64,000 nucleotides of DNA from Camelus dromedarius. Taxonomy: Eukaryota. The notes below the pieces were generated by a model. It did no database searches, was not told the DNA's origin, and saw only the letters and a program-made list of their open reading frames with translations. The position numbers and the translations under genes were made by a program. The stretch is taken from contig NC_087462.1 in NCBI RefSeq assembly GCF_036321535.1, positions 10,974,001-11,038,000 on the forward strand, read 5' to 3'. Of this stretch, positions 23,526-63,284 are shown in pieces; position 1 is the stretch's first letter; the number at the start of each line of letters is the position of its first letter.

Positions 23526-27384
<3,859 letters not shown>

Positions 27385-27732
27385 TGTCCCTGGCTGGGTG
27401 GAGTGACCTTGGTCTAGAGGTTGGGGAGAAGGAGGAGAGAAGAGTGGGGAGGTGGAGAGTGGGGACAGGCACACCAGCCTACCTTCTGGCTGCCCCTGCC
27501 CAGTGCTGAGAGGGAGATGAAGGGGTCCCCACCCTTGACCAGCCCAGGATGCAGTAGATGCTCATTGAACACCTTTGGCCCAGGCCTTATAAGGAGAAGG
27601 CTGACCAAAGGGAAAAGATTGAGAGGTGCAGATGCTCTCACCTGAGGCTCTAAAGCGAGACAAGCTGGTAATTGTGGGGCCCCCTAGGGCTTCCCTATTT
27701 GTGCAGTGGTGATAACAGTGTTGTGCATTGCC

Positions 27733-28481
27733 AACAATGAATGCTAGAGAGGGTGTGGAGAAAAGGTAACCTTCTTACACTGCTGGTGGGAATGTAAATT
27801 GGTGCAGCCACTATGGAAAACAGTATGGAGATTCCTTTAAAAACTAAAAATAGAGTTACTGTATGAAGTTATCGTATGATCTTACAATCCCACTCCTGGG
27901 CACATATCCAGATAAAACTCTAATTTGAAAAGATACGTGCACCCCAGTGTTCATAGCAGCACTATTTACATCAGCCAAGACATGGAAACAACCTAAATGA
28001 CTATCGACAGATGACAGGATAAAGACGATATGATATATATATATACATACATATACATACACACACACATACATATACATACACACACACAATGGAATAC
28101 CACTCAGCCATTAAAAATGAATTAATGCCATTTGCAACAACATGGAATGCACCTTGAGATTATCATTCTCAGCGAAGTCAGTTAGACAGAGACAGACAAA
28201 TATCATGTGATATCACTTATATGTGGAATATAAAAAAAATGATACAAGTGAACTTATTTACAAAACAAAGACAGACTCACAGACGTAGATAAAAAACTTA
28301 TGGTTACCAAAGGGGAAAGGGAGGGGAAGGGATAAATTAGGAGTGAGATTAGCAGATACAAACTACTATATATAAAATAGATAAACAAGGTCCAAGTGTA
28401 GAGCACAGAGAACTATATTCAATAGCTTGTAATAACCTATAATGAAAAAGAATATGAAAAAGGATATATATATATATATAT

Positions 28482-28531
<50 letters not shown>

Positions 28532-29300: not shown

Positions 29301-32300
29301 TCTTTTTTCTTTCTTTCTGATAATTGAAATTTTCTAACTTTTCTCCCTCAGTGATTATAGATTTCTTTTTTAAAAATTTGGAGGGGAGAACATAACAGAA
29401 ACCCCAACCCCTGCCCCACTTTCCAGCAGGAGGAGGGGGAATGCCTTGGAAAGACTTTAGGCTTGGAGCCTTCAGACTGGGGGGCTTTGGGCCCAGGGCA
29501 ACTGGGGAGAAACCCTGGACCCTCCTCATGGGGATCTCGAATCTCCCTGGCGGGGGCCCCATGGGTAAAAATGAACAGCTCAGTGAGGACAGCATATCCC
29601 CAAGACAGGGTCCAGGCCTTTCCCCATGGCCCCCATGCAGGGCTCCTCGGAACCAAGGAATCATATTGCCAGTCCTGCAGCACCCACCTCGCCATACAGA
29701 TGGCCACCTCGTGGCCCCCAGGACCTGAGACCCACCTCTGCCAACTCTACGACCACACTCCACCTCTCAGCCCTCCCCTGTCACAGGTGACTGGGATCAC
29801 GCCACAGGCTTGCCCAGGGTGAAGTGGGTCTGAACTCAGGTCCCAGCCAGCCTCTGACCAGATGGACAGTCCTCAGCAAGGGAAGCCTCTCCCTTGGCCT
29901 CACTTTGCTGTTCTGTGAATGGGGTGGGCATGAAATGCCCAGTACCCAGAACAAGGCCTGGGGATGAGTTCTTGGGAAGCGTAGGGAAATGCAGGCCTGG
30001 CTGGAAGTAGCCATGCCTGCTTCCCAGACCCCAGCCCATCATTTGCAGCCCGCTATGTGACCGCAGGCACACCCTCCACCTTCTCGGGCTGGATCTCTGA
30101 GCGGTCACGATGAGGCAGCGCCCAGGCTGATGGAAGCCCCCACCTTAGCCCCACAGCTCCAGCTTGACTTGCTAAATTTAACCTCTGGGGCTAATTTTAA
30201 TCCCCGGCCGGAATCAGGCTAGTTCCCACGGCTGGGATGCATTAGCCCCTCCCCGACGGGTCCCTGGGGACAGGAGGAGGGCACTGGCCCGGAGGTCTCC
30301 ATGCCAAGATGACTCCGGAAATGCCCCCCACGCCTGGGGTCCCATGGGAACATGGGACTAGGACATGAGTCTCTGGGCCTGGAAGATCCAACCCTTGCCC
30401 CTTCTCCATCTGTCCCCATATCAGAAAAGGACATCCTGGCCAGGGCAGGGTTCACATAATGGGGGAGCACCAAGAGCTAGAAGGTCAGAGGAGGGTCTCT
30501 CTGAACTGAGACCCAAGAGTCAAGACAGGAAGTAAGTTCCAGGCAGAAGGAACGGCAGGTACAAAGGCCCTGAGGAGGGAGGGGACTCATCAACAAGGCT
30601 GGAGTGAGGAGGATGGGGAGAGGATGCTGATGCAGGGACAATCTGGGTCCTCTGAGCTGCTGGGAGAGCTGTGGGTTTTGGTCTAAGAGCAATGGAGAGC
30701 CATGAAGGGTGGGGTTTGGGTAAGAAGGGATGGGGTTTGATTCATCATTGTAAAACTTGGCCATGGCCATGGCTGCCACGGGGAGCAAGACTGCTGGAGG
30801 CAGGGATAGAGATAACAGGAGACTGGAGGGAGGCCAAGGCTGTGTCCGTCTGGGCAGAGTTGGGGGTGAGGCCCCTCTGTACTTGGCCTGCACCATGCAC
30901 CTTAAGTCACTGTTCTCCAGGGCTCCTTGGGTCCTCCAGCAGCTACCAGAGCCTCTGCCACCCCTGGAGCCAGGCCTGAAAGGCGCAGATGGGCTCATGC
31001 AGGGGTTTGACTCTTCTGACCCTTGGTGACCTTGGAATTCCCAATCCTCACCCAGGAACCAAAGTCATTCCCAGCGCTGGCCTTTGAGGGATTTACCCAC
31101 CACACGGTTCTGATCATGCCCCTCCTGTTCACAACTCTTCATGGCTCCTCACTGTCCTCAGGAAAAAAAGGAAGTCTCAGCCCCCAACCTGGCATTCGGG
31201 GTCGTGCCCCAATCAGCCCTTGCCTACCTTTCTTTACCTTTAACAAAATGTCTCTGCCTAAAAAGTCCCTTTGCCTCTTCTGTACCTGGCCAACTCCTAT
31301 TCACACTTCAAAGCCCAGCTCAAAAAATCAATTCTTCCAGGAAGCCTCCTCTGCCCTCACTCTGGACTCCCACAGCCCCTGTCCTGCCCTTCCAGCTCTG
31401 ACCCTGCGGGCCTGGGGGTGCTGTATATCCAGCTCTCCCTCTCCCCCAGACTGGAAGTCCCTCAGGACCAGACACAGGGGTGACAGGGAAGACCTGGTAA
31501 ATGGAGCAGGTCAAGAGGGACACGTCTGAACTCCCCCCAGCTTCCCTCAACAACTTCCTCTCAGACTCCCCCAGCTGACTCCTTACCCAGAAATACACGC
31601 GCATGCAAATCCAGCCACGCAGCGTTGCCCTGCCTCAGGCCCAGGTGTAAAGGGTCAGCCAAGGAATGCGGAGGCGGAAGGCCCAGGGTGTGCATATATA
31701 TTTGTACTCACATGCAAATCCCCACCCTGAGCCGCAGACAGACCTGGCGGCCCGTTCTCCAGATGTTGGCGTGATCGGAACTGCTGGGGGGAGGTGGCAG
31801 TGCGTGCTAAATGTGCAGGGCACGAGGGAGAGGCTGGGGTTGGGGGAGGCTGAGGTTGGGGGAGGCTTCTTCTGTGCACATATTTCCCCTACCCCCACCA
31901 ATGTCCAGGTAGAAAGCAGAGAGCTTGTGGCATTGGCTCAGCAGAGAGGCAGAGAGATGGACCCAATGATCTGGGAACAGAGCAGGGAAGAACAGTCAGG
32001 AGAAATCCAAGAGGGCATCTCCAAAGAGGAAGCACATAGTTGGGCCTCAGTGGAAAGACTTGACAGGGGTCTGAGCAGATGGGGCCAAGAGTCCAGTATC
32101 TCCTCACCCCTTTCTTTGCACCTCCTACTTAGCATTTATCAAGCATCAACCACGTACCAAACATTGCGAGAAACTCACCTGAAAAGACATAGAAAGCTTA
32201 AATAGACCAATGACCATAGAAAATTAGAAAAGTGATTCGAGACCTACTATTAAAAGGGCAACATTCTTTGAATGGCCTCAGACCTTTGAAAACAATGGGA

Positions 32301-32689: not shown

Positions 32690-33330
32690 TACTTTCACGC
32701 ATTGCTGGTGGGAGGGGAAACAGGTAGAGCCCCTCTGGAAAACTCTCCAGCATCTACTAAAGCGGAACACACATCTGCCCTCTGACCCAGCAACCCTCCC
32801 CTCAGTATTCACCTAAATGGGTCCATGTTTTACCAAAGGACACAGACAAGAATGTTCTCAGCAGCTTCGTTTGTCATAGCCCTGAACTGGAAATGACCCA
32901 AATGCTCTCCATTCAAGAATTGGTAAATACTTTCTGGTAGGTTCCATGGCAGACGGACTATATACAGCACAGGAAAAGGATGCATTCCAGCTCCACGCAA
33001 CTACACAGGTGAATCTCCCAGACCTTGTGCCGATTCAACAACATTGGGCTTCATAAAGGGGACACAACATGTGATTCCATCTGTGTGAAGTTCCAGAACA
33101 GACAAAGCTCACGTACAGTGACTATCAGCACAGTGGCCCCGACAAGCAGACACTATAACAGCACAGCGGGAGTCTCAGGGCTGGGGTGTTCCGGTCCCTG
33201 ATCCAGGGCCTGGGTACACAAGTGTATTTAGCTTGTGCAAACTTTTTAGCCCTACTCCAATCATCTTTGCATTTTTCTCTGAGATTTATCTCAACCAAAA
33301 GATTTTTTTTAAAAACTCCCCTCTGTTCCT
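32690..33330 (+). mobile_element. Old L1M fragment
   Basis: cattgctggtggga...ctggaaaac...atgacccaaatg...tgattccatc degenerate L1 3' region. Confidence 0.65.
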
Positions 33331-34929
33331 GGCTGCCGTGAGGAGCAGCGCCTGTCTGGGCAGGAGTGAGGTGACAGGGAGAGGCTGGGGCAGGTGTCCT
33401 GGTGGGAGATGTGGGGCCTGAACTGGGATGGGGGCCGCAGGCAGGCTGAAACAGATGGACTGTTTGGTGACGAAGGGGACAGGACATGCTAGTGGCATAT
33501 GCCTGGGGTTTGGAAGGTGCTTGGGGTTTTAGACCTGAGCACTGTTCAGGGGAAAAGTGGGGGGATGAAGGAAGATTTCTTGAATGCCTGGAGCATTATA
33601 AACTCTCTTAGGTGATACCTGTGGTCAGTAAATTCATCAACAAACACCCCTGGGGTTCTTCAGGCCATGACTGTCTCCTCTCTCTAAGATGCCTTTCTTG
33701 GAATTGGAGGTGGGGGGCTGGAAGGAATCCCACCCTCTCCTTGACCCTTCACTGCTGGCCTCTCTCCATGGAAGGACTCCATTTTCTTGCCTGTAAATGG
33801 AAGTGAGAATTCTCCCACCAGCTGGGGAGGAGGGGGCAGTGGAGGGGGTTCTATGGACCTTGTCTTCTGGCCTCCCATTAGCCAGAAGGAAGAGGGGCCT
33901 TGGAACTGGGGATGCTGAGTCAACATGCCATGTTGCAAGACCCCGGTGACAGTCACTGCGACATGCTGGACGACAGCAAACCCCCATTTCCTCCTCTATA
34001 AAATGGGTCACAGCATCCTGATCTCAAAGGTTTTGCCATGAGGCTGTGAGAGAAAAGACCAGGAACAGTCAAGTTCCTCTTCTAGGCTCCCAGTGGGGCT
34101 TTAATGGAGGGCCAAGTGGCAGAGTCACGCTGCCAGACCCTTGAGCCCAGAGGCCTCAGCTTGGTGGGGGACCCAGGCCGGGAAAGGAGAGGGGGAAAGG
34201 AGAAGTGAGAGGCAGGTGGGTGGTGGGGGGGAGGTGAGGGCCTGCGGGACGCGGCGAAGCGGGGAGGGGGCGCTGCTCCTGGGCGCTGCAGCAAATCAGG
34301 CCTGAGGCCCCGCCTCACGCAACCCAGGCGGTGGTTTCATCACCTGCTCCCCAAGTACCTCATTACAGGCGACAGGAAGAGCCCCTTGGAAAGTCGGGAC
34401 CCCCCCTCCCCTCTCTTGAGGGCTCAAGCAGCTCCGACCCCAGCTGCTGGCGACCCTCCCCCACCCCAGCCGGGGCCCCTGAGCCGCCTCTTCCCCTGGG
34501 GGCCTAGGGAGATGGTGGCCCAGGTGGGGGGGCACTGTAGGTGACCTAGGGGCTGGCTCAGCCCACAGCAGCCCCTCACCTGCCCTAGGGAGAGGGCGGG
34601 CTCTGGCAGTGACTCCTGTGTGGCCAAATTTCTCCAGGCCTGTTTCTTACCCCAGAATATGAGGAGTGGGGGGCACATCCCTGAGCTGGGGAGTGCTCTA
34701 CAGTAGGTGCTCTGGAAGTGGCATATCTCTCCTTCCCTATGCGGGTGGCTTTTGTAATCACTGGGCCCTGACCTGTCCCAGAAGGTCTTGGGGTCACTTC
34801 TCCCCAGCCCTGAGTGCCCAGCTCAGAGGGCCCCCTGCAGATCCAGGAAGGGTGCTGGGGCAGGGGGGCCAGGGAGAAGCCCTTTCCTCATATGTACAGT
34901 TGGGGGTGAGTTTGGGAGATTCTGCTCAC

Positions 34930-35300: not shown

Positions 35301-38300
35301 GCCTCCCTCCCCTGCAGTGGTTTTGCCCATCCTCTGGCTTCCTGAGGCAGGATGGGAGCACCCCCTGGGGGAGAGATGTGGGCTGGGGGGTGGGGGTCCT
35401 GAGGGTGAGGTGCCAGGGTGATGATCTCAGGGACCCCCATATATGGACCGTGCATGGGGACCACAGGCTACGTTGGTACAGGTGGCAGGGGATCATGGGG
35501 ATCTGTGGGGTATTTCTGGAGACCGTGGGGGTCTGCGGGTGGGGTGTGTTACCCTCATGTGGCTCTGAATCCTAAAAACCCAGAATGTTCCAGCTGGAGA
35601 AGGTCCTTGGGGGGTCCCTTTGTGCATAGGTCTCTCTGGCATCCATGGGGAAACTGAGGCCCAGTGGGGGACCTTCAGACCTTCCTCCACAGACCCCTCC
35701 TTGGAGGGACCTGCCATGTGTGGCCATGTGCTGAGAGGTACGTGGGCCTGGCTGTGACTGTGGGTCTGGCTAGACCAGTATTCATATACTGGCTCCACTC
35801 TACACTCAGTGCCTGACACATTCCGAGTCTCAGTCTCCCTACTTGTACCATGGCCCCCTGGGGCTCCTCAGGCATCCATTCACCCGCCCCTCCTCTTTAG
35901 GGAGGCTTCATCTACTGGCAAATTTCCAGCTCACCTTCTGCCCCTTTCCAGACACCTGAAACACCCCCCAGACAGACCTGCCGCTTTCCCATCGCCAGGC
36001 CTTTGCCTGTGCTGCGCCCTCTCCCTGAAACACCCTTCTCAGACTCACCCAGGTCTGAGAAGCTGCTACACATCCTTCGAGGCTGGGCAAAAATCTCTCT
36101 CCCCAGAGGTGCGTATTTCCCCAGATCAGACTTCTCTCTCCCTGTGGCACTTAGTTCTACCAGATATTTTCTGTGCTTCTATGCTACTTTCTTTGATGAT
36201 CATGTCGCCCTACTAGGATGTCGGCTCTATGAGGCCAGGGATGGAGGCTTCCCTACACCCGGCACACAGTAGGCTGGCAACCACCTTTCCTTGAATGAAT
36301 GAGCAAACAACTGCTTAACAAACGGAAGAAACATTGGCAACTGGTTTAGTTTTCCTTTTAACACTTCATGGCTCACAAAACAAATATGAGGCCCTGTCTG
36401 GTCACCAGTTTGAGACCCCTGCTCTCAACAGTCAAAAGCACACCAGCCAACTGGATGGTGCTCACACTTCTCTCAGGCCAAGGGGCTGACCCTGTGAAGG
36501 TTCCAGCGCCCATCTCAGAAGGAAACTGTCATAAGGACATGCAGTACCCGGCTGCCCTCCCTGTCCACTGCCAACAGAGGCTCACCGCCCCATCCCACCT
36601 CCCATACGGCCTGGGACCCCTACCCCTGGGGCTGGGGGAGACTCCCCAATCTGCCATCTCACACAGATCAGAGCCCTGGGCCACCCAAGACCCTCAGTGA
36701 TGTCCCCTAAGCTGCAGTGGCAGCTGCAGGAACAGCCCAAAGTTTATCTCTCTTTGTTCCAGAGAAAGATCTCCCTGTAGGGCCCCAGAAATTCATCCCC
36801 AGAGGTCCAGGCCTCCCTGCTTGGGAAATTAGCACATCTGTCAGCACTGGGCAGAAAGGACTCGGCCCATAGCCCAGCAGACCCAAGACATGGCCAGTGG
36901 GGAACCTAAGATGGGGCCTTTGGGGCATCCCTGGTCCCCACTTTCTTCTCCCAGAAATGTCTGGGAGCTTAGCAAGGTGCCAGGGATACAAGGACAGGGA
37001 GTGGAGAGATCCAGCCTGGACTTCCCCATTGCCCAGTCTGGTTGGGGAGACAGACACATAACTGTGTCAGGGACAGAGGCCTCTGATGAAGAAATTCAAT
37101 AGGGGGAGGCAGTGGGGAGGGGTGGCAGGGAGGGAGCTGCTTTGGACAAAGAGGCCAGAAGGGGCTTTCTGAAAAGGGAACCTCAAGGATGAAAGGAGAC
37201 CAGCCACAAAGGGATGTGGGTGAGAGATTGCCTGGTGGAAGGTATGGCAGATGCAAAGTCTCTGAGGTGGAAACATGCTCAGTGGGTTCCAGGTATGGGG
37301 GTGGCTGGTATGGCTGGGTATGGATGGGTGAGCAGGGGGCATCTGGAGACAGAAGAGGGCAGGGAGACCACAAGGGGCCTAAGAGATCAGGTAAGAGAGT
37401 GGGCTATAGAGCAGTGGGGAGCCATGGAGGGTGTATGAGCAGGGGAGGGAGGGCTGTGGCATGATTCAGGGTTTTCAGAAGACCCTGTGGCTGCTGTGGG
37501 GAGAAGTCCTATGGGAGCAGGAGGCCAGGACGGCATCCAGCGGGAGATGGCAGAGTCTTTGGTTGTGGAAACTGAATAGAGGCAGACCTGTGCCCACAGC
37601 AGTGACTCGTTATGACAACCTGCTTGGATTGTTCCCTTCCAAGGACTCTACTTCAACCTCCAGTGAACGTGAACCTGGAGGAGATCAGGACAGAGAAGCT
37701 GAAAGGCCTGAGACTGCTTGGCCCCATGGGGAGCGGGCGGTGAGGGTGGGCCTGGATGGGGCTCAGAGGCACGTCCACTCGATCATAGTTCAGATGGCAC
37801 CTCTTGTTGTTGAGTGCCTACTGTCTGCCCGGGCCCACGCTCCACCTCATTTACACACAGGACCAGCCTGACTCAGATAGCCCAGTGAAGCGGAGACAGC
37901 TGACCCGGTTCTACTACACAGGAGGAAGCGGGCTTCTCCCCAGAGCCACTCGGCAGGACCCCAGATCCTCACTCAAGCGTGGGCGTGTACCCCAGGGTTG
38001 TCCGGCTGCACCCCTAACTCACCCTCCCCGCTGCCCAGTCTAGAAAGTAGGCCTGGGCATCAATGGGGTCCAAGACACTCATTCTTGGGTCACCTGGGGG
38101 CAACAGGCCGCCTCACAAGCCCCTAAGATGCAGGCCTAGGGAAGCCCTTGTGGGGGCTGAGAAATGGGACCCAACCTCTGTGTACACCCCATGCGGATTC
38201 ATGGGCCAGGGCTGGGGTGACCTCTCTGACCCCAAATGGGATCCCAGGCATATGATAAATCCTCTCCGACAAATGACATCTGTCTCCATGTGCATATGTG

Positions 38301-39539: not shown

Positions 39540-39790
39540 GCAACACAACTTTATACACACAACTCCCGAACTGACATGAAAACCCTCAGACACATTCCCC
39601 TTGGACACACAAGCCCTCAGACATGATACATTCTCCTTCAGACATAACTCCTGGACATGAAACTCCTTGGACACTCATCCTTTGGTACACACAACCTCTC
39701 AGAAACACAACCCTTGGACACACACCCTTTGGACACACACCCTTTGGACACACAACCCCTGGGACACACAGCCTCTCAAATTCCCAATTC
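39540..39790. repeat. Degenerate ~16-nt tandem repeat (cacacaccc(t)ttgga)
   Basis: acaacccttggacacacacccttttggacacacaccctttggacacacaacccctgggacacac. Confidence 0.75.
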
Positions 39791-39915
39791 TAGGACGCAC
39801 ACTACTTAGACAACTCTCCGATGCATAGCAAGACATTCGGACCTTCAAACTCAACCCAGCCCACAGAAGCTATTCAAAGGACACGGCACAGGCCTCGGCC
39901 CGACGCGACACGCAC

Positions 39916-40000
39916 CTGCTCCACCTGGACCCTCGGACGCTCGCGCACCGACCCGGCGGCAGCGGCACAGAGCTCCGAGCACCCCGGCGGCCACAGGTGC
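39916..40000 (-). other. MEF2B: MEF2B non-coding exon 1 (5' end approximate)
   Basis: GC/CpG-rich, no ATG, ends GGAGCAG|gtgcgt at 39916. Can splice to the exon 2 acceptor (tag|ACCAAGG at 27413). Confidence 0.7.
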
Positions 40001-40160
40001 CTTCAGAGTGGGAGGCCCCGCCCCCAGGAGCTGATTGGCCGGGGCGGTGGTTTGCATGGAGGGCGTGTCTACAGGCGGTGATGGGCGGGAACTTGGGCGT
40101 GGCCCGGCATCGCGAGTTCTGGGGCCCGGTACTTAGACGCGGGAAGACGCAGAGGTTAGG
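40000..40160 (-). promoter_or_regulatory. MEF2B: MEF2B CpG-rich promoter
   Basis: GC box (ggccccgccccc, about 40015-40025), CCAAT box (ctgattggc, about 40032-40040), GGGGCGG, octamer-like GTTTGCAT (about 40051-40058), E2F-like GGCGGGAA (about 40084). Confidence 0.7.
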
Positions 40161-43100
40161 GGAGGAGAGTACAGTGAGGGAAGAGGACCCGGGAGAGGGC
40201 TGGATCAGACGTGCCAGGCTTCCTACCCTGTCACTGGTCACTCCTGACCTTACTGCTGACCCTGACCCTAATTCGGACCCTGACTCTAACCACTGCTAGC
40301 TCCTGGACTTACTCCAACCTGACTTACTCCAACCTGAATGAACTATATCTCCGACCCCGGACCCTGAGGCCCCAGGGACCGAGGGCTTCTCGAAGCCATC
40401 CCTAACCCTTGCTCTTTCAAATAGAAGGACTGCAGAAAGGGGCTCTGGGGTCGCTGTGTGGACTATTCCAGCTGTGCCTCCTGCAGCTGGGCCAGAGGGG
40501 GTCAGGGAGGGCTGCCCCCAAACAGGGGGCATTTGTACTGGGCCTTGAAGCATGAGTAGGAGTTTGCTACTGGTTGAAGGGTTTTCTAAGAGGGAACAGG
40601 ACTTGCAAAGATGCAGAGAAAGACTGCAGAATAGTCTTTGGTGGAGGAGGATGAGGGAGATGAAGCCAGAGTAGTGAGTGGAAGCAGACTGAGCTGGGCA
40701 TCCACGGAGAGGCTTGGAGATGAAGCCATGAGGTGGGATGGGGAAGTCCATTTGGGGCAGATGAAAAGGGGAGAGCAGGTGGGTTGCAGTGGCTGCCTGA
40801 TGTCCACCTTCTCAGAAGACAACAGGAGATGGCTGGGCCTCTGGACTTGGTGGGGAGCATGTGGAGATATCAGTTTGTAGGGGACACTGGGGAAGGAAAC
40901 CGAGACCTTAAGAAGATTTTGCCTCTCCCCACACCTCAGTTCCCCCACTGTGACATGGGCACTGTGGACCTCTAGCCTGGGCATGGATTTCTCTTTGGAT
41001 ATAAAAACTAGAGTTTGCACTGTGTCATAAAAAGGTGGGATTAGGGGTCTGTCTTGCCTCCCCCACCCCACCCTTGCTGTCCCTCAGTGCCCAACACCAG
41101 ACACTCAAGTGTCCCAAGGCCACACCAGGGCCCAGGCCAGGTTGGGGGCTTCTGCCTGGGCTCCAAGGCACAGAACAAGGCTTGGGGATATTGAGGTGGC
41201 TGGGGAGGCCCCAGGCCCCTCGAGGGCTGCTCTGTTTACCCAAGGCCGCCCGCCTGCCTCTGATGCAATAGGCAGGCTCTGGTTACGTGAGGGCGGCAGC
41301 TGGAGCAGCTCTGGGAGCAGCCCTGGGAGCGGCCTGAGCTGAGCCGGCTGGGGCTGCCCACTATGGGCCACACCTCTTGCCTCCCATCACTGGGGCTCCT
41401 TCCCGTGTTCTTGCCCCTGCCATGTTGCCTCCTTCCACCACTCATGTTCCCAAACTCCCTTCCCATTTCTATCATTCTATCAATTCCATTTCTATCATTC
41501 ACACTATGATTCCTATAACATCCCCTCCTTTTTGCCTTTGCCCCTCTTCCTGTACTGTATTCTCCATCACTGGCTATGTTACCCCATGTGGACCTCCATC
41601 CCCCACTGGGGCAATCAAGAGGTTCAACCTCAGTCTTCTCAGATGAGGGGATACCCTTAGTTGCTGGAATAAGAGGTTGGAGTGTTGAAAGGGAGATTTA
41701 AGGGGAGAAGGGAATGGAAAAGGCCATAGAGGGAGATCTGGGAAGGGGGCCTGGAAGATAAGGAAGGTAGGGGCAGGTGGAGGCAGGGGTGAGGAGGTGA
41801 GGAGATACAAAAGCTGCTCCCTCCCAAGTCTCCCTCCTCCAAATCCTCTCCAAGAATGTCAGCAGGGGAAGGCTTTGAATGACCCTTCAAGGTAAGGATA
41901 GTGTGGTCCACCAGGTAGGGCTTCAGGGCTCCAGAACCCTGGGTCCCCATCCCAGCTCCGACTCCCACTTGCTGTGCAACCTCTGGCCAGTCACTTCACC
42001 CCTCTGAGCCTGTTTGCTCAGAGGGCAGGATCCTCTGAGAGTGCAGAGCAGGCCTGAAATAAAAACCAGGATTTGGATCTAAGGGGCTAAGAACAAAAAG
42101 CCAAAACTCTTCAATTAAAAAAAAAAAAAACGGCCAAAACTCAAGTCTGATTCCCATTCTGACCACCGTGGACCAACCAGGGGCAAGTCGCAGCCCTCTT
42201 GGGCCTCCTTTTACTCCATCCACAGATGTGAAGGAGCCCAGGTGGGGCATCCAACACGTTACCCAGGGATCCTTTCCAGGCGGCCCCCACCCTCATGGGT
42301 GCTAGACTCCCTGCTTGAGTGCTCTGTGCCACGGGGAGCTACCTGCCTCTCTCCTGGCCATCTACCTATTTCTGGGAGTTTTAGTGAGCAGGATCTGGGA
42401 ATGCCCACTCCCTCCACTCTGGGGAGGTAAGGCTGCCAGCGCATGGGAGCTGGTGCGAGGTCTTGCTGGGTAACCTGGCCTCGCGGAGCCTTGGTTCACT
42501 TTCTGAAGCAAGGACGTATGAGGTGAAAAAGGGCAGAGGGTTACGATCCACCCTCCAGTATCAGCCAAGACTGAGGACAACGACCGCTTGGAGGCAGAGT
42601 GCTGGGCCAAGGCTTTGCCTCTTGCGTCCCCTGGCGGCCAGCAGGGGCAGGACACTCGCCAGGCACGAAGGGCAAGGCGGCATAAATGAAACGCAAATTA
42701 ACCATTACCTCTGTAAGCCCTAGGACTTGGGGTGGTGGAGAATTTGACAACCTAGAGTCCTCCACAGACCTCTTTGAGAGGACATATTAGGCGTGGGCTG
42801 AAGTCGCGTTCAGGGCTGTGCGTGACAGGGAGCCCTAGGAAAGTCTAGGATACCTCATGACTGCCCCCCACTAGGCTCACAGCACCTGACCTGTCCAGGG
42901 CTGCCCCTGGGTAGTTACCTCACTGAGCTGCCCCTATGTCCCTTGGGTCTGTGCCCTGGGGCCATGGTTGGCCTGTCTGGCTCATCAGGACATCCGCTGG
43001 AGAGGCAGGACCCAGCTCAGAGAGGGTGGCCAGTGTTTGCTGGATAAATGGCTGCATGGTAGAAGGACAGATGGACAATGAGAGATGCCTTCGGAGAGGG

Positions 43101-46035: not shown

Positions 46036-46598
46036 CATCACTGTATGCGGCAGCACCCTCTCTGCCACCTAATGAACCACTTTGACAGAAAGGAAAAGCA
46101 GAGACCAGAGTGGGGAGGGACTCGCTCAGGGTCACACGGCAGGTCAGTAGTGGAGCGAGGATTCCAGAGAGGGGTGGATACCTGCTGTGCTGGGCTCTGC
46201 CTGAGACAATGCGTGTGGGTAAAGCAAGCAGCTAGCATGTGGCCAGGCTGGGGAAATGTGGGCTCACCTCCCTGTCCTGGGGACAGGGGTCCTTTGGAAT
46301 GGGACAGGGCCTATGGCCTGGATAAGGGGCAGGAAGATGGCAGAGAGAGCACAAGGGAGATGGGCTGACCAAAGGACTGAGCAGCAGAGGGCACAAGGTC
46401 CCCTTCCCCTCCAGCCTCCCACTAATAAAACCATCTTACAAGCTTAGGGAGAAAGCCCAAGTGGTTAGTCGAGCAGGTCCCTTCTTGGATGTCAAGAGGG
46501 TGGGTTAGTTTAGAGCACGGAGCACAGAAAGGCTTACAGCCCCGCTTGGCACTGACCTGGGTCAGAGGGGCCAAAGCACCTCCAAGTCTCTTCTGGGA

Positions 46599-49500
46599 TC
46601 AGGCCGAGGAGGGCGGGGGCAGTTCCTCAGGGCTGGAACAAAACATGTGCAGTGTCCATGAGACTGAGGTCAGAGGCCCCGAGGCCTGCTCGGCTAGCCT
46701 GGACTGCACATTGGGGTTGTGCTCCAGTCCCCCAAGACCCCTGGCCTGAGCCTTCAGGGCAGCCTCTGTAAAAATGGGACCAGCCACCCACTTTCAGAGG
46801 TCATGGCTGGTACTCACGTAGGACTGGGGGCTTCAAACTCCCAGGACTTGCAAAGAGAGGTCTTAGCAGGTAAACAGCTACTACTCAGGCTGCCACTAGT
46901 GTCTTTCAGAAGCACGTATTTTCACAACAGCAGGCACAAGGAGGGCTTTTTGGAAGCACTTGGGAAACTGAGTTGAAAGTAAAGGCTATGGTTTTCGAGG
47001 ACCTACTGTGTGTAGGGGTGTGCTGTGCAAAGCGCTTTACATAGTGAACTCCAGTCCTAATGGCTGTCACCAGCCTGGGGCCGAGCAGCCAGAGCCAGTT
47101 GGTTATTTGGTGCAAATGATCCCAGGTGAACCCCTCTTCATGCCACCCTCATGTGCAGGTCACCACACATCCATTCTTACACATTCACAAGGCTTTTTTG
47201 TTTTTGATGATTCTTGTGTCTTGGTTATCACCAATAGCAACACAGAGGGTTTTTTTTTCTTTCTAAATGCCTGGTCGGGGACAGGCATGCCAGAACCCGA
47301 AACTGCAGGGCCAGACACATCTCAAGGCTTACAGCATGTGCATGTATGCACAAATGCATGTTTATTAAGTTACAATGAAAACAAGACCAAAAAGATCTAC
47401 TTCTCCAAAATCTCTCTCCCCAGTCGCAAGAATTATAAATACTTTTCATTTCTAGACCATCTGGTCATCGGCTCAAAGCCTCTTTCAGCTCTGGGCAGCC
47501 TCCTTGCTGCCTTCAAGGCCCCGCCCAACTCCCTTACCTCGCCTCCCCCTTGTGCACCCACTCCAGCCACACCCAGCTCACCAGGCCTAGGGCTTCTGCC
47601 CCTGCCACCACAGTGCCTGGAACACCGACCCTGGGTCACCTCTGCCCACATGTCATTCAAGCCTCTGCTCACACCTCTGTCACTTCCTCAGAGAGACCCC
47701 CGCAGCCCTCTTCCTTTACGCACGTCTGAAATGTTGTCTGTTCCGTGTTTACCTGGTTGCTGTGCGTCTCCCTGTGAGACCATGGGCACACCTGTCTTGG
47801 TCGCTGCCATGTCCCCGGCACCCAGCCCAGGGCCAGGCACCCGGCAGAGCTCAGGAGCTGGGTGCTGAGAGACTGAACTCTCCTGCTACAGACGCCAAAG
47901 GGCGAGAGGAAGTCACGAGACACCGTGAGGCGAAGAAAGGGAGTTGTCTAAGGAGCGAGCAGTGGCAGTTCCTGGCTGAGCAGCGGAGGTCCTGACAGCA
48001 AGGAGGCTGAGAGCAGCAGGGGAGGGTGGTCCCGGGAGCTACCTGTGGCCCTGGGCTGTGGCGTTCATGTGGTCTCGGATGTTGATGGCCTGTTTGAGGA
48101 GACCCTCCACGCTGCGGAAGTAGACGCTGCTGTCGACAAGGTTCTTCACAGCACTGAAATGGGAGGATGGACTCAGTTGGCGCCATGCTGCTTCACCCCA
48201 GAGCCAGAGCTCCATGGACGCCCGCACCGGTGTGTATCAAGCACCTGGGGAGTCCATGGGCTTCCCTCAACGCTCATCGTGGGCCAAAAGTTTAGTTTCC
48301 CTATGTGACAGAGCACTCAATGGCAACACGCAACTTCCACGCTGAGGCTGCTAGACCATCTAAAGCTTTGAAGGAGCCGTAAACGTACAAAGACGACCTA
48401 AAAAAATCTTACTTTCCTCAGGTCACCTATTCCTGCCCCTGAAGGAAGCCTGTCAACTCAACTGTGAAAAGCTCTAAGAGGTGAGTTTAGACTCATCACC
48501 ATTTGAGAGGCGCTACCACAAAGCTGTGCTAAGCTCTGGTGTTGGTACCACACTGATGAATGTCTAATGAAAATGCTCCAGTTGTGGGGAAGAAGGGATA
48601 AACTGGGAGTATGGGACTGGCAGACACAAACTACTATGTACAGAATTGAGAAACAAGGTTCTACTATGCAGCACAGGAAGCTATAGTCAATGGGCTGTAG
48701 TAACCTGTAATGAAAAAGAATATGCAAAAGTATATATATATAACTGAATCACTAGGCTGTACACCAGAAACTAATGTAATATTGTAAATCAACTATACTT
48801 CAATTTAAAAAAAAATTTTTAAAAATGAAAAAAGAAAAAAAAAAAGAAAAGAAAAGAAAAGAAGGAAAGTGCCCCTCTTAACAGCACTACAGGAAAATAT
48901 TCACCAAGCCACTCTGGCCTTGCTAACGTCAGAAAGCTGCCTGTGCAATGATACCTGCAGTAAAAATAAAAGGGTGGTTTTAAAGTCCTTCTATTAAAGA
49001 CAAAGAAATCACTCCCATTTATTACCAGTCAGGGACCTGCTTGAAAATGGCCATGAGATCAAAGAGGGGGGAGCTCGGTTGTCACCTGCTCTGTTGACAA
49101 ACTCATCTGACACCAGCAAACAGGGTCAGCTTTTCTAGTGTCTGTTCACCTTGATAAAAAGCTGTCTAACTTATGTTACCATTGAATAGTAACAGATTCA
49201 TTATTACAGCTCACTATTGAATAGTTCACCCCTACCAATATGCCATTTTAACATCTTTCAGATTATTTTTTAAATTTTAATTTTTTTTTTAAATGGAAGT
49301 ACTGGGGATTGAGCCCAGAACGTTGGTCATGCTAAGTGTGAGCTCTACCACTAAGCTACAACCTCCCTTCACATCTTTCAGTTCTACACCAACCATTAAA
49401 GCATTTCAAACAACTAAAAGGGTGCTTTCATGTCTGTAGAGGAAATACAGTCTTTCAGCATTAGAGAAATTTACATCTCACTAAAGAGAAGTGCTGCGAG

Positions 49501-52500
49501 GACACTGGCCCTCTGCCTGGCCCAGGGCAGTCCAGTGGAACAAATGATGGACAAATCCTTTATCCACTGAAGTTGCTCTAAGCACCTGAAAGGGGGCTAG
49601 TGAGACTGAGGAGCTGAATCTTTCATTTTATTTCATTTTTATGCATTACAATTTAAGTGTGAACAGCCACCTGGGGCCAGGGCTCTTGTACCGGACAATG
49701 AGGCTAGACGAACTGGGACGAAGTACAGACTTCGATCTGTTCTTCCTTGAACGTGGGCCTTTCTGATGAGCCCTTGGCTTTCTGGGAGCTGCCAGAGAAA
49801 CTCCCCTTTCTTTTCTCTCTTTCTTGAGCTATAAGGTAGGTGTCTGCGACCACCACCCTCAGGAAGATGTCATCTGTCTGGGTCACCTTCCCATCCCAGT
49901 GGAGAGGCCAAGGCTGCTGATGGTAGAACTCAGCTCAGTGCCCCCAGAAGCAGGACTTCCTGTCAAGGGACCTTCGACCACACAACAAACAGGCAAGCAA
50001 ACCCCACAGCACCACACACAAGAACTGCTAGGGAGTGTCCAGTCTCCACCAAAACAATCCACAGCCTGTACCGGGGCCAACAACACTTCTAAGTAAAGTC
50101 ACCAAACTCCCAAAGCAAACAGAATGAGCCAGAGCATGAAATACAATCATGGGGAACCAACAGAATCACAGGAGGCGAAGCCGGCAAAGCTGCTCTGATG
50201 GAGAGAAATACCAACTACTGCTTTTTATTCTCAGGCACAACTTTCACTTGGGGTTAAGAAAAAATATCTGAATATCTAGAGAAAGTTAAATCAGCAAAAA
50301 TAANNNNNNNNNNNNNNNNNNNNNNNNNNNNNNNNNNNNNNNNNNNNNNNNNNNNNNNNNNNNNNNNNNNNNNNNNNNNNNNNNNNNNNNNNNNNNNNNN
50401 NNNNNNNNNNNNNNNNNNNNNNNNNNNNNNNNNNNNNNNNNNNNNNNNNNNNNNNNNNNNNNNNNNNNNNNNNNNNNNNNNNNNNNNNNNNNNNNNNNNN
50501 NNNNNNNNNNNNNNNNNNNNNNNNNNNNNNNNNGATTCCACTTATGTGAGGTGCCTAGAATTATCAGATTCTTAGACAGAAAGCAGAATGGAGGGTGCCA
50601 NNNNNNNNNNNNNNNNNNNNNNNNNNNNNNNNNNNNNNNNNNNNNNNNNNNNNNNNNNNNNNNNNNNNNNNNNNNNNNNNNNNNNNNNNNNNNNNNNNNN
50701 NNNNNNNNNNNNNNNNNNNNNNNNNNNNNNNNNNNNNNNNNNNNNNNNNNNNNNNNNNNNNNNNNNTTTATGCTATGTGCATCTTACCAAAACACAAGAA
50801 ATTGGAAAGAAATAAAAATTTAAAAATAAACAGTCATATTCGGGTTTTGGCCCGACCAGCTGCCATCCACGCCCCTGGCCAGTCTGTGGTCTTCACTGTC
50901 AGTGGGAAACGCTGGCCCCTCGAGGCACCGGCTTCCTGCCCAGGTGGCATCTCCCGGAATCCTTATCACCTCCCCCTCCTATGACAGATGGGGAAGGACT
51001 GAGTGCCAGAAAGAAGCCTGCCCCAGGCACATGGGGGTCAAACGGTGAGAAGCTCAAGTCTGGGCTGGAACCTGCCCTGTGGCCAAGTGAGTCCAGATCC
51101 ATATGCCTCTACTCAGATGGGTTCGGCAGGGGAGGCTGACAGGGCAGTGGGCTGAGATGCCCCTGCAGGCGCAGGAGGTGACCCCAGGGCATAACAGGGC
51201 AACCCTGGCAGTGGGGAGGCTGTGGGGCTCACCTGCAGGCATACTCCACTGTGTAGATGGCTCCCTGGCTCTGCTCCTCCCACCGCTGCATGTCAGCCTG
51301 TTGGGGTGAGGGGGCTGTTAGCAGGGGTGGCTGCTACTTCCATCCTCCCAGCTCTCTGGGAGGGCACATCTGATCACCAGTCACCATGGCTATAGAGACC
51401 GGTCCCCTCCAGCCCCTGATCTTTCCTCCTCAAACTCCCATCCCTTACCAGTCTGGGCTTTCCAGGAACACATGGCAACTATGCCTCAGGGCCTTCACAC
51501 AGGCTATTTCCTTTTCCTGGCACATCCTCCCCTTGGGTCCTCATATGGCTGCCTCCTCCTCACCACACAGGTCACAACTGATGCAGACCCTGCTGTTCTC
51601 TTCTTCCAAATCTGCCCCAGCTCTTTCCACCCAGCTCCAACCTGGGTCAGTGACCATGTTCCCTGACACTGGTGTCCCAGCCTTGACTGCTAAACCAACA
51701 GCCCCTGCTCCACACAGCAGGCCCCAGGCCACAAGGTGCAGACCTTGGGAGACATTGGGAGTAGGGCTCACCTTATGCTGGGCCAGCTCAGGCAGAGAGC
51801 GTCGCACGTGCTCCTGCAGCCGGTACAGGGCCACGGATGGCTCGTTGGCCAGGACATAGACGCTCTCAGTGAATTTGTCTGTGACTGGGTCCAGGATCGA
51901 CAGTTGGCAAAATGGGGGGTGGGGGGTGGGGGAGAAAAAGAGGGACAAGGAGACAAAACATCAGACTCCTGATTGCTCATGAGTCCAGCTAGAGTAGAGA
52001 AGAGTCCAGTGTCCCTCCCAGCAGCTGGGTCACCTGTGGCCCAGGTGATGCGTTGTGGGAGTTGGTCACAGCAGGGCCTCAGTCTTGAGGACATCAACCT
52101 GTCCAGTGAACTCATGATCTTTCCCTTCCCAAACCCACTTGTAGTGGACACTGCTGCCACCCACTTGTATCCATTCACATTCCCTTTACCCCAGTGACAA
52201 AATTCCAAGATTCTTCTTCAGAGGATGCCCACTGGCTACTGGACCCAAAAGTGACAGAAAGTTGACACCCATGGATGGCTCTCAGCCATGACTAACCACC
52301 GAGGGGTATGAAAACCCATGTCCCGTCCTGTGTGCTGGAACATCTCAGAGGCACAACTCATACCTGTGAGCACCCCTGAGGGAACAGGCTGAGGCCTCCC
52401 TCTGTGCGATTTACCTGAGGTCATTCCTTGCTTAGCCTCTTCCCTGGCCCTGTTTTGTCTCCCCTTCTCCTCTGTGGGGTTCTCTTGGTAAGTTAATCGC

Positions 52501-60437: not shown

Positions 60438-61586
60438 TCACACCTTTTTTTCTCCTAGTACTCGCAGGTGGTAGATGACTACTCGGCCGAAGAAATCAGT
60501 GGTGTTCTCAAATGTCACTTTCAGCCGGTCCACCTCAGCAGCTGGCACAGGGAAGGTGTAAGCAGAGCAGTCAAGGGAAACAGGTGCCTCACTATTTCCC
60601 ACCTACCAGCCCCAGCTCAGATACCCCAACATGCTGGGCAACCTGGCACGCTATGGGCCACTCTGAAGCTCTCACTCAGAACAGATTATTATGAGCCCAT
60701 TCTACAGATGAAGCAGTGGAGACCTAAAGGCATCTCGCTCCAGGTCACACACCAGGTCCCACAGCTTTCAGAGGCACAGACCACCCCACCCAGAGGCTGG
60801 AGCAGGATATCTGAAGCGAGTTGTTGTCCGCAGGGTAAAAGTCCACAATCTTTCCAAAGGCCTCACTCCCCTGGGAACCTGCAGGGTAGAAAGGAGCAGA
60901 CTGTGAGGTCGGTGTGCCCCCTCCAATCCCCCACCTTCTAGGACCTTCTGGTACCTTCCAGGCGGCCCTGGTGACAGGAGAAGCCCCCTTGGAACTGGAT
61001 CTGCAGCTGGGAGACACAGATGCGCTGGGGAAACTCCAGTATCACCCACTGGGAGGGGCCCTGGAAGCAGATTGAAACAGAGGCCCATGGTCACTCTGGG
61101 CTCAGAGCCCTGCTATGCACGTCTCTCATTCACACAGTCTGTGGTGGGTGAGGGGGTACACAGGTTCCTTCCCTGGCCAATCTGACTGCCCATCTGGGGT
61201 GCCCTGAAATTCTAGGACCCTTGATTCTAACTCACACTTGGGGTGGAGGGTCCGGAGAGAAGGTGCCTCACCTGGTCTGAGTTCCAGCATGTCTCCTCGT
61301 CCTGGTCGAACAGGTGCTTCTTTCCAAACTGCCTAGTGTTACGATTCAGCACCGAACTCACCCTGGAAGCAATCAGAATCAGGGCGTGGAGAGGTGTTGA
61401 GCCCAGCGGCGAGGACCCACCTGCTATCCGGCCCACCCCTTCCTCACCACCGGTTCCCCCATTTCTGTCCACCCGGGTCTAACCGCAGGCCAAGAGCCTC
61501 GCCCACCATTGGCCGCCTCCGTTCACCTAACCCCACCTGGGCTCTCACCTGCTTACTGTCTCTGGACAAACCAAAGAGTGGGTCAT
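60438..61586 (-). CDS. NR2C2AP: Nuclear receptor 2C2-associated protein (TRA16), 140 aa. Exons: 61549-61586, 61272-61362, 60955-61060, 60811-60878, 60438-60557
   Basis: 423 nt joined frame MTHSLVCPETVSRVSSVLNRNTRQFGKKHLFDQDEETCWNSDQGPSQWVILEFPQ...DFYPADNNSLQ|TFPVPAAEVDRLKVTFENTTDFFGRVVIYHLRVLGEKKV*. The last junction works only as an AT-AC intron. Confidence 0.96.
60558..60810 (-). other. NR2C2AP: U12-type AT-AC intron 4 of NR2C2AP (253 nt)
   Basis: Begins ATATCCTGCT and ends TTTCCCTTGACTGCTCTGCTTAC|; removal restores the frame SLQ|TFP. Confidence 0.93.
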
Positions 61587-61589
61587 CTC

Positions 61590-62060
61590 GGCGCCACAAG
61601 GCCTCGCAGGATTCAGGGCTTCGCTCAGCCCCGATTTGAATCTCGGCGCCAAAGCAGCCGCAGGGGCGCGATCTCATTCACGTCTCAGAGTCTGCACGTC
61701 CTCACCTGTAACACGGCACAAGGACCGTCACTGCCCCGTCACTTCACTCCTAAATGTCGCCGTTATCACCCCCTTGCCGGACAGATTAGGAGTTTCGGGG
61801 AAACTGTCAATGACTGAAGTCCAGAACTTTCACAGTGGGTCCAAGGAGGGGAAACAGGTTTCCTGAGGGGACAACTGCTCCCTCTCCGAGCCTCAGTTTC
61901 GCTGCTAACAGCTCGGGGAACCAAAACCCAGACCCGGAACCGCGTCAACACTGCGCAGGCGCAGTGTTACTCAGGTTCGCCCAGCCCGCGCTCCCGGGGC
62001 GCGGTTTATTTTGAGCCCCGCCCCCTCAGCGCCCACCTCTTAAAGGGCCCTTGTCCAGTG
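61590..62060 (-). promoter_or_regulatory. NR2C2AP: NR2C2AP CpG-rich promoter/5' UTR
   Basis: CpG-rich; NRF1 motif TGCGCAGGCGCA at 61952-61963; GC box ccccgcccc near 62016. Confidence 0.75.
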
Positions 62061-63284
62061 ATTGCGTGTCCCTCGGAGTTGGAGGAAGAAGGCTGGCACC
62101 TAAAGCAAATGTGTTACGACTGTGTACGGGGCGCTGTCCTTTGGTGCCCGCGGGTATAGAGCACTAGTTTTGGAGTCCGAGAGATTTCTTATAATGATGT
62201 CTTCCTACCGGCAAAATGAAGTCGGCCGGATTCATTCCTTAACTGCAACTGGAGCCTGGGAACCCCTGCACCTCACTGCCTCCCAGAGGCCGAAGGAAGA
62301 GTTGAGGAAGAAGCCAAGATGTTGCGAGTACTGGGAGTCTTTATCAGCCTCATGTGTCCCCAAATCCGTCTTCTCAGTTAATGCTGCCAGGGACAGGCGT
62401 CTTGGAGGAGGGGGAATGCGAGGTGGATTTTGAAGGATGAACAGGAGTTTACCAAACCGGATTACACAAAGCCTCAGATACATGGCTAAAGATTTGTTTC
62501 ACTGATTCATTAAACAACTGCCACTCCCTTACTGCCCAGTCCTGTCCTGGGTGATGCTGGAGAATGAGAGAGGCCTCAGCTCCAGCCCCATACCTGAGGA
62601 TCTCCCAATGTGGGTAAGCTAGACATATACACTCTCGGCCCTATGGGGCCAGGGCTGAGCCAGGGGGGAGAGAGAGAGCTGGGATAGCAGGGGCTATACT
62701 TGGAGAGAGGGTTTCCTGGGAGAGGCGATATTAGGCCTGCACTTTAATGGATGGGCAGAAATTCACCAGGGTGAGGAAAATGGGGAGAGAGGCGTAGGCA
62801 GGGAGAACAGCATAAGCAAAGGCCTGGTTGGATGAAAGACCATGAATTTGAATAAAATATGTGGAGCCAGATCCTGCTAGGCCTAAAGCAGTCACGGAAG
62901 GTGTTTGAGAAAGGGCGGTTCACCATCCAGTCTGCATGAATGGAGGGCTCTGAAACAGAGCAGCCACTGGCAGGAGGTTGCAGTTCCTGGCTTTAACGGA
63001 ATGGTCTGGGATCCAACCCCTTTTTTCAAGGGCTAGGGGAATGGTCCTCCTGGCATCCTACTAGTGTCTGGCCAAGTCCACACCAGGAGTGGGGGCTGGC
63101 TGGGAAACTGGGACACCAGCGGAAGGGCCACACCATCAGCCCCTGCCTGCCAGGACTTCTTGCATTCAGTCATGGCCTGGTGCCATTCAGACCTCGTTCT
63201 GCTCGTCTCAGGGCCGGGGCTGGGGGTGTCAAAAAAACACCTCCCTACCTACCCCTGGAGGAATTTAGGAAGAGCGTGGACTCC

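What the first reader, a model, noticed from the sequence alone, without database searches (positions are those of the whole stretch)
31587..31725. Ig-promoter-like octamer/TATA module with a splice donor inside MEF2B intron 1: candidate B-cell-specific alternative promoter
Seen: on the MEF2B (-) strand the order is perfect octamer ATTTGCAT (31712-31719), TATATAT (31694-31700), about 90 nt of CpG-containing sequence, a second perfect octamer (31603-31610), then a strong donor CTGG|gtaagg at 31587/31586. I recognised no repeat in the module. Known: an octamer upstream of TATA is the OCT1/OCT2-OCA-B architecture of immunoglobulin V promoters, and MEF2B is a germinal-centre B-cell factor that works with OCT2/OCA-B. 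Inference: an internal promoter yields a short non-coding exon (about 31587-31670) spliced to exon 2 (27413), separate from the CpG promoter near 40000.
Basis: partly seen in the sequence, partly recalled or inferred. Interest (0 to 1): 0.7.

Follow-up and report, generated by a model that had tools for sequence, protein, structure and literature searches.

The report
Conserved double-octamer regulatory element in MEF2B

Summary
On the MEF2B (-) strand, ATTTGCAT sits at 31719-31712 and 31610-31603, TATATAT at 31700-31694, and CTGG|GTAAGG at 31587/31586. The window is camel (Camelus).

The pair is not chance. In eight other mammals (hippo, warthog, oryx, fox, mangabey, mouse lemur, grass rat, platypus) the sense strand carries the same two perfect octamers, 106-120 bp apart and 3.7-5.5 kb upstream of the ATG exon. 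They lie in a ~275-bp conserved core (31810-31535). The core also keeps two E-boxes (one CACCTG between the octamers) and ETS/PU.1-like sites.

The specific promoter and exon model is not supported:
- TATATAT is confined to camel, hippo, warthog and oryx.
- The 31587 donor reads GC in primates and is absent in platypus.
- Cetacean gene models place an exon upstream, ending at 31744 or at 31712 (CAT|GTGAGT, straight after octamer 1).

Best reading: an OCT2/OCA-B-responsive B-cell enhancer with possible promoter or exon activity. It is probably the published "+20 kb Mef2b intronic enhancer". Verdict: partly supported. It is a new member of a known kind.

The parts
31535..31810 (-). Core of the conserved non-coding element (about 275 bp)
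   Evidence: In 40-nt windows, 60-88% of columns are invariant in 7 placentals, against 0-40% in the flanks (alignment A2). The grass rat aligns only over 31800-31531.
31712..31719 (-). Octamer 1, ATTTGCAT
   Evidence: Invariant in 9 mammals including platypus.
31603..31610 (-). Octamer 2, ATTTGCAT
   Evidence: Invariant in 9 mammals. Spacing to octamer 1 is 106-109 bp in placentals and 120 bp in platypus.
31694..31700 (-). TATATAT (A/T-rich stretch downstream of octamer 1)
   Evidence: Present in camel, hippo, warthog and oryx. Fox and primates read ATATACAT, grass rat ATAGGTCT, platypus TATATAAA. Not conserved as a TATA box.
31642..31647 (-). E-box CACCTG between the octamers (E2A / ZEB-type)
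   Evidence: CACCTGGG is invariant in 8 placentals and reads CATCTGGG in platypus.
31760..31765 (-). E-box CATCTG upstream of octamer 1
   Evidence: AACATCTGGAG is identical in all 8 placentals.
31776..31780 (-). ETS-like core TTCCG (GGAA on the + strand)
   Evidence: CAGCAGTTCCGATCAC is kept in 7 placentals, and TTCCGATCAC also in grass rat.
31553..31560 (-). ETS/PU.1-like GAGGAAGT
   Evidence: The AGGAAG core is kept in all 8 placentals, within GAGAGGAAGT in all but mouse lemur (GGGAGGAAGT). Absent in platypus. The motif assignment is from my own knowledge.
31586..31597 (-). Unassigned conserved block TGTATTTCTGGG after octamer 2
   Evidence: TATTTCTGG is invariant in all 9 species, although the GT that follows is not.
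31581..31589 (-).
   Evidence: PWM score 7.6 in camel, fox and grass rat, and 5.0 in hippo, warthog and oryx. It is GC in both primates and there is no donor in platypus.
31706..31714 (-). Donor B, CAT|GTGAGT, exon end 31712 (the last base of octamer 1)
   Evidence: Strongest of the three donors (9.1), kept in Laurasiatheria and mouse lemur. Used in the Megaptera and Kogia gene models, which read ...GWGFA|[11 protein letters not shown].
31738..31746 (-). Donor A, CAG|GTCTGT, exon end 31744
   Evidence: The GT is kept in all 8 placentals, but the site is weak. Used in the Monodon, Orcinus and Megaptera models, which read ...GPP|[11 protein letters not shown].
31712..31833 (-). Putative alternative 5' exon, by homology to the cetacean BORCS8-MEF2B models. 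The 5' edge is approximate (acceptor ccccag| at 31835-31834).
   Evidence: tblastn of P0022, P0023, P0027, P0028 and P0074 onto camel 31817-31707. The camel in-frame translation matches the whale peptide. There is no ATG in this stretch (read).
27331..27413 (-). MEF2B exon 2 (first coding exon, ATG at 27387)
39916..40057 (-). MEF2B exon 1 in the CpG island (at least this part), donor GCAG|GTGCGT
   Evidence: The N-terminus of P0068 (Camelus bactrianus) maps 100% to 40057-39917 and then joins exon 2. CpG island at 39651-40250. Sequence.

Best explanation
The module is the centre of an ancient cis-regulatory element, about 275 bp long (window 31810-31535, - strand), in the 5' intron of camel MEF2B, about 4.3 kb upstream of the ATG exon.

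Its two canonical octamers are most likely bound by OCT1/OCT2, which recruit OCA-B in B cells. E-proteins, or the repressor ZEB2, would bind the CACCTG E-box between the octamers. ETS/PU.1-type factors would bind on either side. Together these would switch MEF2B on in activated and germinal-centre B cells.

The element acts mainly as an enhancer for the CpG-island promoter near 40000. It may also have promoter-like activity, because an alternative 5' exon overlaps its upstream half. It is probably the orthologue of the published '+20 kb Mef2b intronic enhancer'.

Shown here: the sequence, its conservation, its motif content and the exon in cetacean gene models. Inferred: which factors bind, B-cell specificity, and enhancer versus promoter.
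For: Conservation:
- Both octamers are invariant in 9 mammals, with conserved orientation, spacing (106-120 bp) and position 3.7-5.5 kb upstream of the MGRKKI exon.
- They are the only sense-strand octamers in 7 of the 8 other loci. Warthog has one further copy at L001:5883, far upstream of the pair.
- In platypus the pair survives although BLAST finds no similarity there.
- There is a sharp conservation peak at 31810-31535.
- Two E-boxes and the ETS-like sites are conserved.
- Local CpG o/e is 0.55, against 0.20 for the intron.

Literature:
- MEF2B expression falls without OCA-B, and ChIP-seq calls it a direct OCA-B target with several binding sites (PMC13043367).
- E2A binds conserved E-boxes at Mef2b/MEF2B (PMC4925024; PMC4886367).
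- ZEB2 binds a conserved, B-cell-accessible intronic region about 20 kb from the Mef2b exon-1 TSS, marked by H3K4me1, H3K4me3 and H3K27ac (PMC7616037 and its preprint).

A ZEB-type CACCTG is conserved in the module.
Against:
- Identity with the '+20 kb' enhancer is not proven. The intron holds five blocks conserved between camel and grass rat, and three of them carry a conserved ZEB-type E-box. The distance argument rests on mouse coordinates recalled from memory.
- Motif assignments other than the octamer are consensus matches from my own knowledge, not tests.
- Part of the conservation could instead serve the overlapping exon.
Confidence: 0.62

Rival explanations
1. It is an alternative, B-cell-used promoter with its own first exon, which is the general idea of the first reader. 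Transcription would start inside the conserved element and the short non-coding exon would splice to exon 2 at 27413. The exon would end at one of three candidate donors (31744, 31712 or 31587), and the choice may differ between lineages.
For: - Cetacean gene models show that an exon ending at 31744 or 31712 is spliced to exon 2.
- That exon has no ATG in camel, so it would make a clean 5' UTR.
- The published intronic region carries H3K4me3.
- Donor B is strong and kept in Laurasiatheria. Donor C is the only good donor in grass rat.
- An Inr-like CA lies about 31-33 nt downstream of the TATATAT stretch (read; the consensus is from memory).
Against: - In the cetacean models the exon is internal, preceded by exons mapping to 33453-33072 and by BORCS8 exons. 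It is not a first exon.
- No single donor is conserved across mammals.
- The TATA is not conserved.
- The camel model P0068 joins exon 1 directly to exon 2.
- RNA runs that hold 31300-32000 hold 93% of it, flanks included. That looks like unspliced RNA or DNA.
- No paper describing such a promoter was found.
Confidence: 0.28
2. One reading: octamer 1 and TATATAT drive a TSS near 31670, giving an 84-nt exon that ends at 31587.
For: All the pieces are present in camel in the right order. Donor C scores 7.6. The octamer-TATA distance resembles known octamer/TATA promoters (my own knowledge).
Against: - TATATAT is limited to camel, hippo, warthog and oryx.
- Donor C is GC in primates and absent in platypus, yet the sequence around it is invariant. 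The constraint is therefore not on splicing.
- An out-of-frame uATG inside octamer 2 opens a uORF across the MEF2B start codon.
- Donors of this quality are common: 42 GT sites scoring 6 or more lie in the same intron.
Confidence: 0.06
3. The conservation reflects only a conserved 5'-UTR or cassette exon of BORCS8-MEF2B read-through transcripts. The octamers would be incidental.
For: Cetacean models contain the exon. Both reading frames through it are open in camel.
Against: - Conservation continues about 175 bp beyond donor B into the intron and is strongest there (31620-31541).
- The splice sites themselves are lost in grass rat and platypus, while the octamers are kept.
- The exon-coded peptide is found only in cetacean models.
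Confidence: 0.04

Closest known systems
'+20 kb Mef2b intronic enhancer' bound by ZEB2 (Dai et al., Science 2024, PMC7616037)
   Same: An intronic conserved region of Mef2b/MEF2B upstream of the coding exons, with a conserved ZEB-type E-box. It is reported as B-cell-specifically accessible and marked by H3K4me1, H3K4me3 and H3K27ac. The module lies 5.5 kb upstream of the ATG exon in a murid. By my recollection of the mouse coordinates, that is about +20 kb from the upstream TSS.
   Different: The paper's sequence figure is not held as text, so identity is inferred. Two neighbouring conserved blocks also carry a conserved ZEB-type motif. The parts of the paper I read do not mention octamers.
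[quoted passage not shown] 2020, as summarised in PMC13043367)
   Same: Canonical ATGCAAAT-type octamers in a B-cell gene's distal regulatory DNA. The expected mechanism is the same: OCT1/2 recruits OCA-B, which recruits Mediator.
   Different: Here the target would be MEF2B itself, which would close a feedback loop. Binding was not tested. The element is small, with two octamers at a fixed spacing.
Immunoglobulin V-gene promoters (octamer upstream of TATA)
   Same: A perfect octamer in the sense orientation a short distance upstream of an A/T-rich stretch in camel.
   Different: The A/T stretch is not a conserved TATA box. A second octamer lies downstream. There is no TSS evidence. The element sits inside an intron among other conserved blocks.

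Membership tests
Ig-type octamer/TATA promoter | Canonical octamer in sense orientation upstream of the start site | tested here: met
   ATTTGCAT at 31719-31712, invariant in 9 species.
Ig-type octamer/TATA promoter | Functional TATA box about 30 nt upstream of the TSS, retained in orthologues | tested here: not met
   TATATAT occurs only in camel, hippo, warthog and oryx. Fox and primates read ATATACAT and grass rat ATAGGTCT.
Ig-type octamer/TATA promoter | Mapped transcription start site downstream of the TATA | not testable with these tools
Contig-type RNA runs hold the whole 701-bp stretch.
Alternative first exon of MEF2B | Splice donor retained in orthologues and joined to exon 2 | tested here: inconclusive
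   Donor C is lost in primates and platypus, and donor B is lost in grass rat and platypus. The GT of donor A is kept in placentals, but the site is weak. Joining to exon 2 is seen only in cetacean models, where the exon is internal.
OCT2/OCA-B-dependent B-cell enhancer | Octamer of the ATGCAAAT type that permits OCA-B docking (the A at position 5; my own knowledge) | tested here: met
   Both sites are perfect ATGCAAAT on the + strand.
OCT2/OCA-B-dependent B-cell enhancer | Purifying selection on the sites, with co-occurring B-cell factor motifs | tested here: met
   The octamers are invariant from platypus to primates. E-boxes and ETS-like sites are conserved in placentals.
OCT2/OCA-B-dependent B-cell enhancer | OCT2/OCA-B occupancy and B-cell-specific open chromatin | not testable with these tools
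   Literature only, at the level of the locus. No coordinates could be matched.
Interspersed repeat / LTR-derived promoter | Other copies in the genome | tested here: not met
   No other copy in the 64-kb window. Single orthologous copy in 8 other mammals. No repeat library was available.

The most novel reading that the evidence does not exclude
The double-octamer element is an autoregulatory switch older than the monotreme-therian split. OCT2/OCA-B activate MEF2B through it. MEF2B then joins OCT2/OCA-B as the third partner of the complex, giving a positive feedback loop. E2A and ZEB2 would compete for the single E-box between the two octamers to set the choice between germinal-centre and age-associated B-cell fate. 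The element would also fire as a B-cell-specific alternative promoter with its own 5' exon.
Probability: 0.22. Interest if true: 0.65.

Novelty: new member of a known kind. Interest (0 to 1): 0.5.

Why it matters
MEF2B is a key germinal-centre factor and a lymphoma gene. It is known to depend on OCA-B, E-proteins and ZEB2, but the DNA sites through which these factors act have not been spelled out in the papers I could read.

A 275-bp element with two invariant octamers flanking one invariant E-box gives a precise, conserved target. It can be tested by mutation in human or mouse B cells, and it suggests a simple wiring for those three published inputs.

For the scan itself, the result shows that this kind of motif-based call can be checked quickly by cross-species comparison.

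Tried and rejected
No junction or TSS evidence exists.
- The look-up of sequencing runs: the RNA holders listed carry half or more of each stretch (20 rows at 0.51-1.00 of 26600-27413, four at 0.93 of 31300-32000). That looks like unspliced RNA or DNA.
- Rfam on 27500-64000 gave no match.
- Self-BLAST found no repeat.
- A Markov simulation of octamer pairs timed out and was replaced by an analytic estimate.
- The look-up of encoding contigs returned no DNA for Rhynchocyon, Monodelphis and Orycteropus, and no record for the squirrel isoform. Afrotheria, marsupials and sauropsids are therefore untested.
- The squirrel N-terminus MGEGFAGSFT, which might come from this element, could not be placed.
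- A protein search with the whale exon peptide found only cetacean models.
- Paper searches for an alternative or internal MEF2B promoter found nothing relevant. Hodson 2016 and Chu 2020 are not held.
- Rejected: chance occurrence, repeat origin, and an NF-kB reading of GGGGATTTGC (its flank is not conserved).

Full report
**What is there**

On the - strand (the MEF2B sense strand), one search shows the following:
- ATTTGCAT at 31719-31712.
- TATATAT at 31700-31694.
- A second ATTTGCAT at 31610-31603.
- CTGG|GTAAGG with the exon ending at 31587.

The gene is MEF2B. The exon encoding [18 protein letters not shown] starts at 27413 behind an AG at 27415-27414, with the ATG at 27387.

Translations of exons 4-6 are 100% identical to the Camelus dromedarius and C. 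bactrianus MEF2B proteins, so the window is camel.

A CpG island at 39651-40250 carries exon 1. The N-terminus of a C. bactrianus model (P0068) maps at 100% to 40057-39917 and then continues directly into exon 2 (sequence).

**Is it more than chance?**

Taken alone, no. The window holds 3 octamers against 1.74 expected, and 25 of 100 shuffles reach 3. Two on one strand within 120 bp is expected 0.003 times per window. That is not convincing in a scan of hundreds of windows. Strong donors are also common: 42 GT sites in the same intron score 6 or more on a simple donor matrix (the matrix values are from memory).

The test that settles the question is conservation. I searched with the last coding exon (collected). 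I then searched with a warthog orthologue restricted to its C-terminal part, which gave MEF2B proteins of many mammals. I fetched the genomic loci of eight of them.

In every locus the sense strand carries two perfect octamers:

| Species | Spacing between octamers (bp) | Distance of the first octamer upstream of the ATG exon (bp) |
|---|---|---|
| camel | 109 | 4332 |
| hippo | 109 | 3683 |
| warthog | 109 | 4295 |
| oryx | 108 | 3972 |
| fox | 109 | 3714 |
| sooty mangabey | 108 | 5540 |
| mouse lemur | 107 | 4737 |
| grass rat | 106 | 5487 |
| platypus | 120 | 4153 |

In seven of the eight other loci these are the only sense-strand octamers in 22-69 kb. Warthog has one further copy at L001:5883, far upstream of the pair.

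In platypus BLAST finds no similarity at this place. The pair, the E-box between them and the block TATTTCTGG after the second octamer are still there.

**Extent and content of the element**

An alignment of seven placentals over 1.3 kb shows a sharp peak. In camel 31810-31535, 60-88% of columns are invariant in 40-nt windows, against 0-40% on either side. The grass rat aligns only over 31800-31531.

Conserved pieces, in sense order:
- TTCCG, ETS-like, at 31780-31776.
- The E-box CATCTG at 31765-31760.
- GGTCTGTCTGCGGC at 31744-31731.
- Octamer 1.
- An A/T-rich stretch.
- The E-box CACCTG at 31647-31642 (CATCTG in platypus).
- Octamer 2.
- TGTATTTCTGGG at 31597-31586, unassigned.
- GAGGAAGT, PU.1/ETS-like, at 31560-31553.

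Apart from the octamer, these names are consensus matches from my own knowledge, not tests.

CpG o/e is 0.55 in the module against 0.20 for the intron. The module has no second copy in the window and no Rfam match.

**What is not conserved**

TATATAT is kept only in camel, hippo, warthog and oryx. Fox and the two primates have ATATACAT, and grass rat has ATAGGTCT.

The constraint at 31597-31586 is therefore not a splicing constraint.

If the proposed exon (31670-31587) were joined to exon 2, the ATG inside octamer 2 would open an out-of-frame uORF running across the MEF2B start codon.

**An exon does overlap the element, but elsewhere**

N-terminal extensions of cetacean BORCS8-MEF2B read-through models map onto camel 31817-31707:
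- Monodon, Orcinus and one Megaptera isoform end the exon at the equivalent of 31744 (CAG|GTCTGT) and read ...GPP|[11 protein letters not shown].
- Another Megaptera isoform and Kogia end it at 31712 and read ...GWGFA|[11 protein letters not shown]. The donor there is CAT|GTGAGT, immediately after octamer 1.

The camel sequence read in the same frame gives a closely similar peptide.

In these models the exon is internal, preceded by exons that map to 33453-33072 and by BORCS8 exons. A search with the exon peptide found only cetacean models.

Donor B is the strongest of the three in camel (9.1). It is kept in Laurasiatheria and mouse lemur but lost in grass rat and platypus. No single donor is conserved in all mammals, while the octamers are.

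**RNA evidence**

None could be obtained. 

Four RNA runs hold 93% of the 701-bp stretch around the module, flanks included. Twenty of the runs listed for the exon 2-3 stretch hold 51-100% of it, intron included. Both results look like unspliced RNA or contaminating DNA.

**Literature**

- A 2026 review states that MEF2B falls without OCA-B and is a direct OCA-B target by ChIP-seq, with several sites in promoters and enhancers. [quoted passage not shown]
- Two 2016 papers show E2A peaks at Mef2b/MEF2B with E-boxes conserved between human and mouse (PMC4925024; PMC4886367).
- Dai et al. 2024 map ZEB2 to a conserved region about 20 kb downstream of the Mef2b exon-1 TSS. It has B-cell-specific accessibility, H3K4me1, H3K4me3 and H3K27ac, and a conserved ZEB2 motif.

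The module carries such a motif (CACCTG). In a murid it lies 5.5 kb upstream of the ATG exon. By my recollection of the mouse gene's coordinates, that is close to +20 kb.

This identity is not proven. The intron holds five blocks conserved between camel and grass rat. Two others (about 7 and 3.2 kb upstream of the ATG) also keep a ZEB-type motif.

I found no paper describing an internal MEF2B promoter.

**Conclusion**

The element is real, functional and at least as old as the split between monotremes and other mammals.

The best-supported mechanism is an OCT1/2 plus OCA-B driven enhancer, with E-protein/ZEB2 and ETS inputs, that controls MEF2B in B cells. I put my confidence at about 0.6.

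An alternative promoter or first exon inside the element remains possible, at about 0.3.

It is a new, well-defined member of a known kind, not a new kind. The region is probably already visible in published human and mouse B-cell data sets.

Noticed in passing
window 30151-30321 (- strand): The tandem MEF2-site pair of earlier finding s1-183004 lies in another conserved block. Camel 30321-30162 aligns to the grass rat locus and 30217-30151 to platypus at 83% identity. Both camel and grass rat keep two MEF2-consensus sites.
   Followed up: partly
window 36678-36916, 34312-34446, 30479-30570: Three further blocks in the same intron are conserved between camel and grass rat. The blocks at 34346 and 30561 carry a ZEB-type E-box kept in both species. 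The intron looks like a cluster of regulatory elements.
   Followed up: partly
window 33072-33453 (- strand): Two stretches match exons of the cetacean BORCS8-MEF2B read-through models. They may be further alternative 5' exons.
   Followed up: no
window 51739-51885, 48004-48159, 46540-46635 (- strand): BORCS8 coding exons, matched by the N-termini of read-through proteins from several mammals. The CpG island at 61351-62300 is the likely BORCS8 promoter.
   Followed up: no
window 31277-31324 and 26900-27060 (- strand): An old interspersed repeat of MIR-like appearance lies just downstream of the conserved core. A related copy in intron 2 gives cross-matches in other species' loci. It was not classified, because no repeat library was available.
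   Followed up: no
window 28470-28530 and 28039-28045 (- strand): A (TA)n microsatellite accounts for most TATA-like matches in the intron.
   Followed up: no
window 23529-23752 (- strand): The last coding exon of MEF2B is open in two frames. These correspond to the two known C-terminal isoforms (...GWPR, and a proline- and serine-rich alternative).
   Followed up: no
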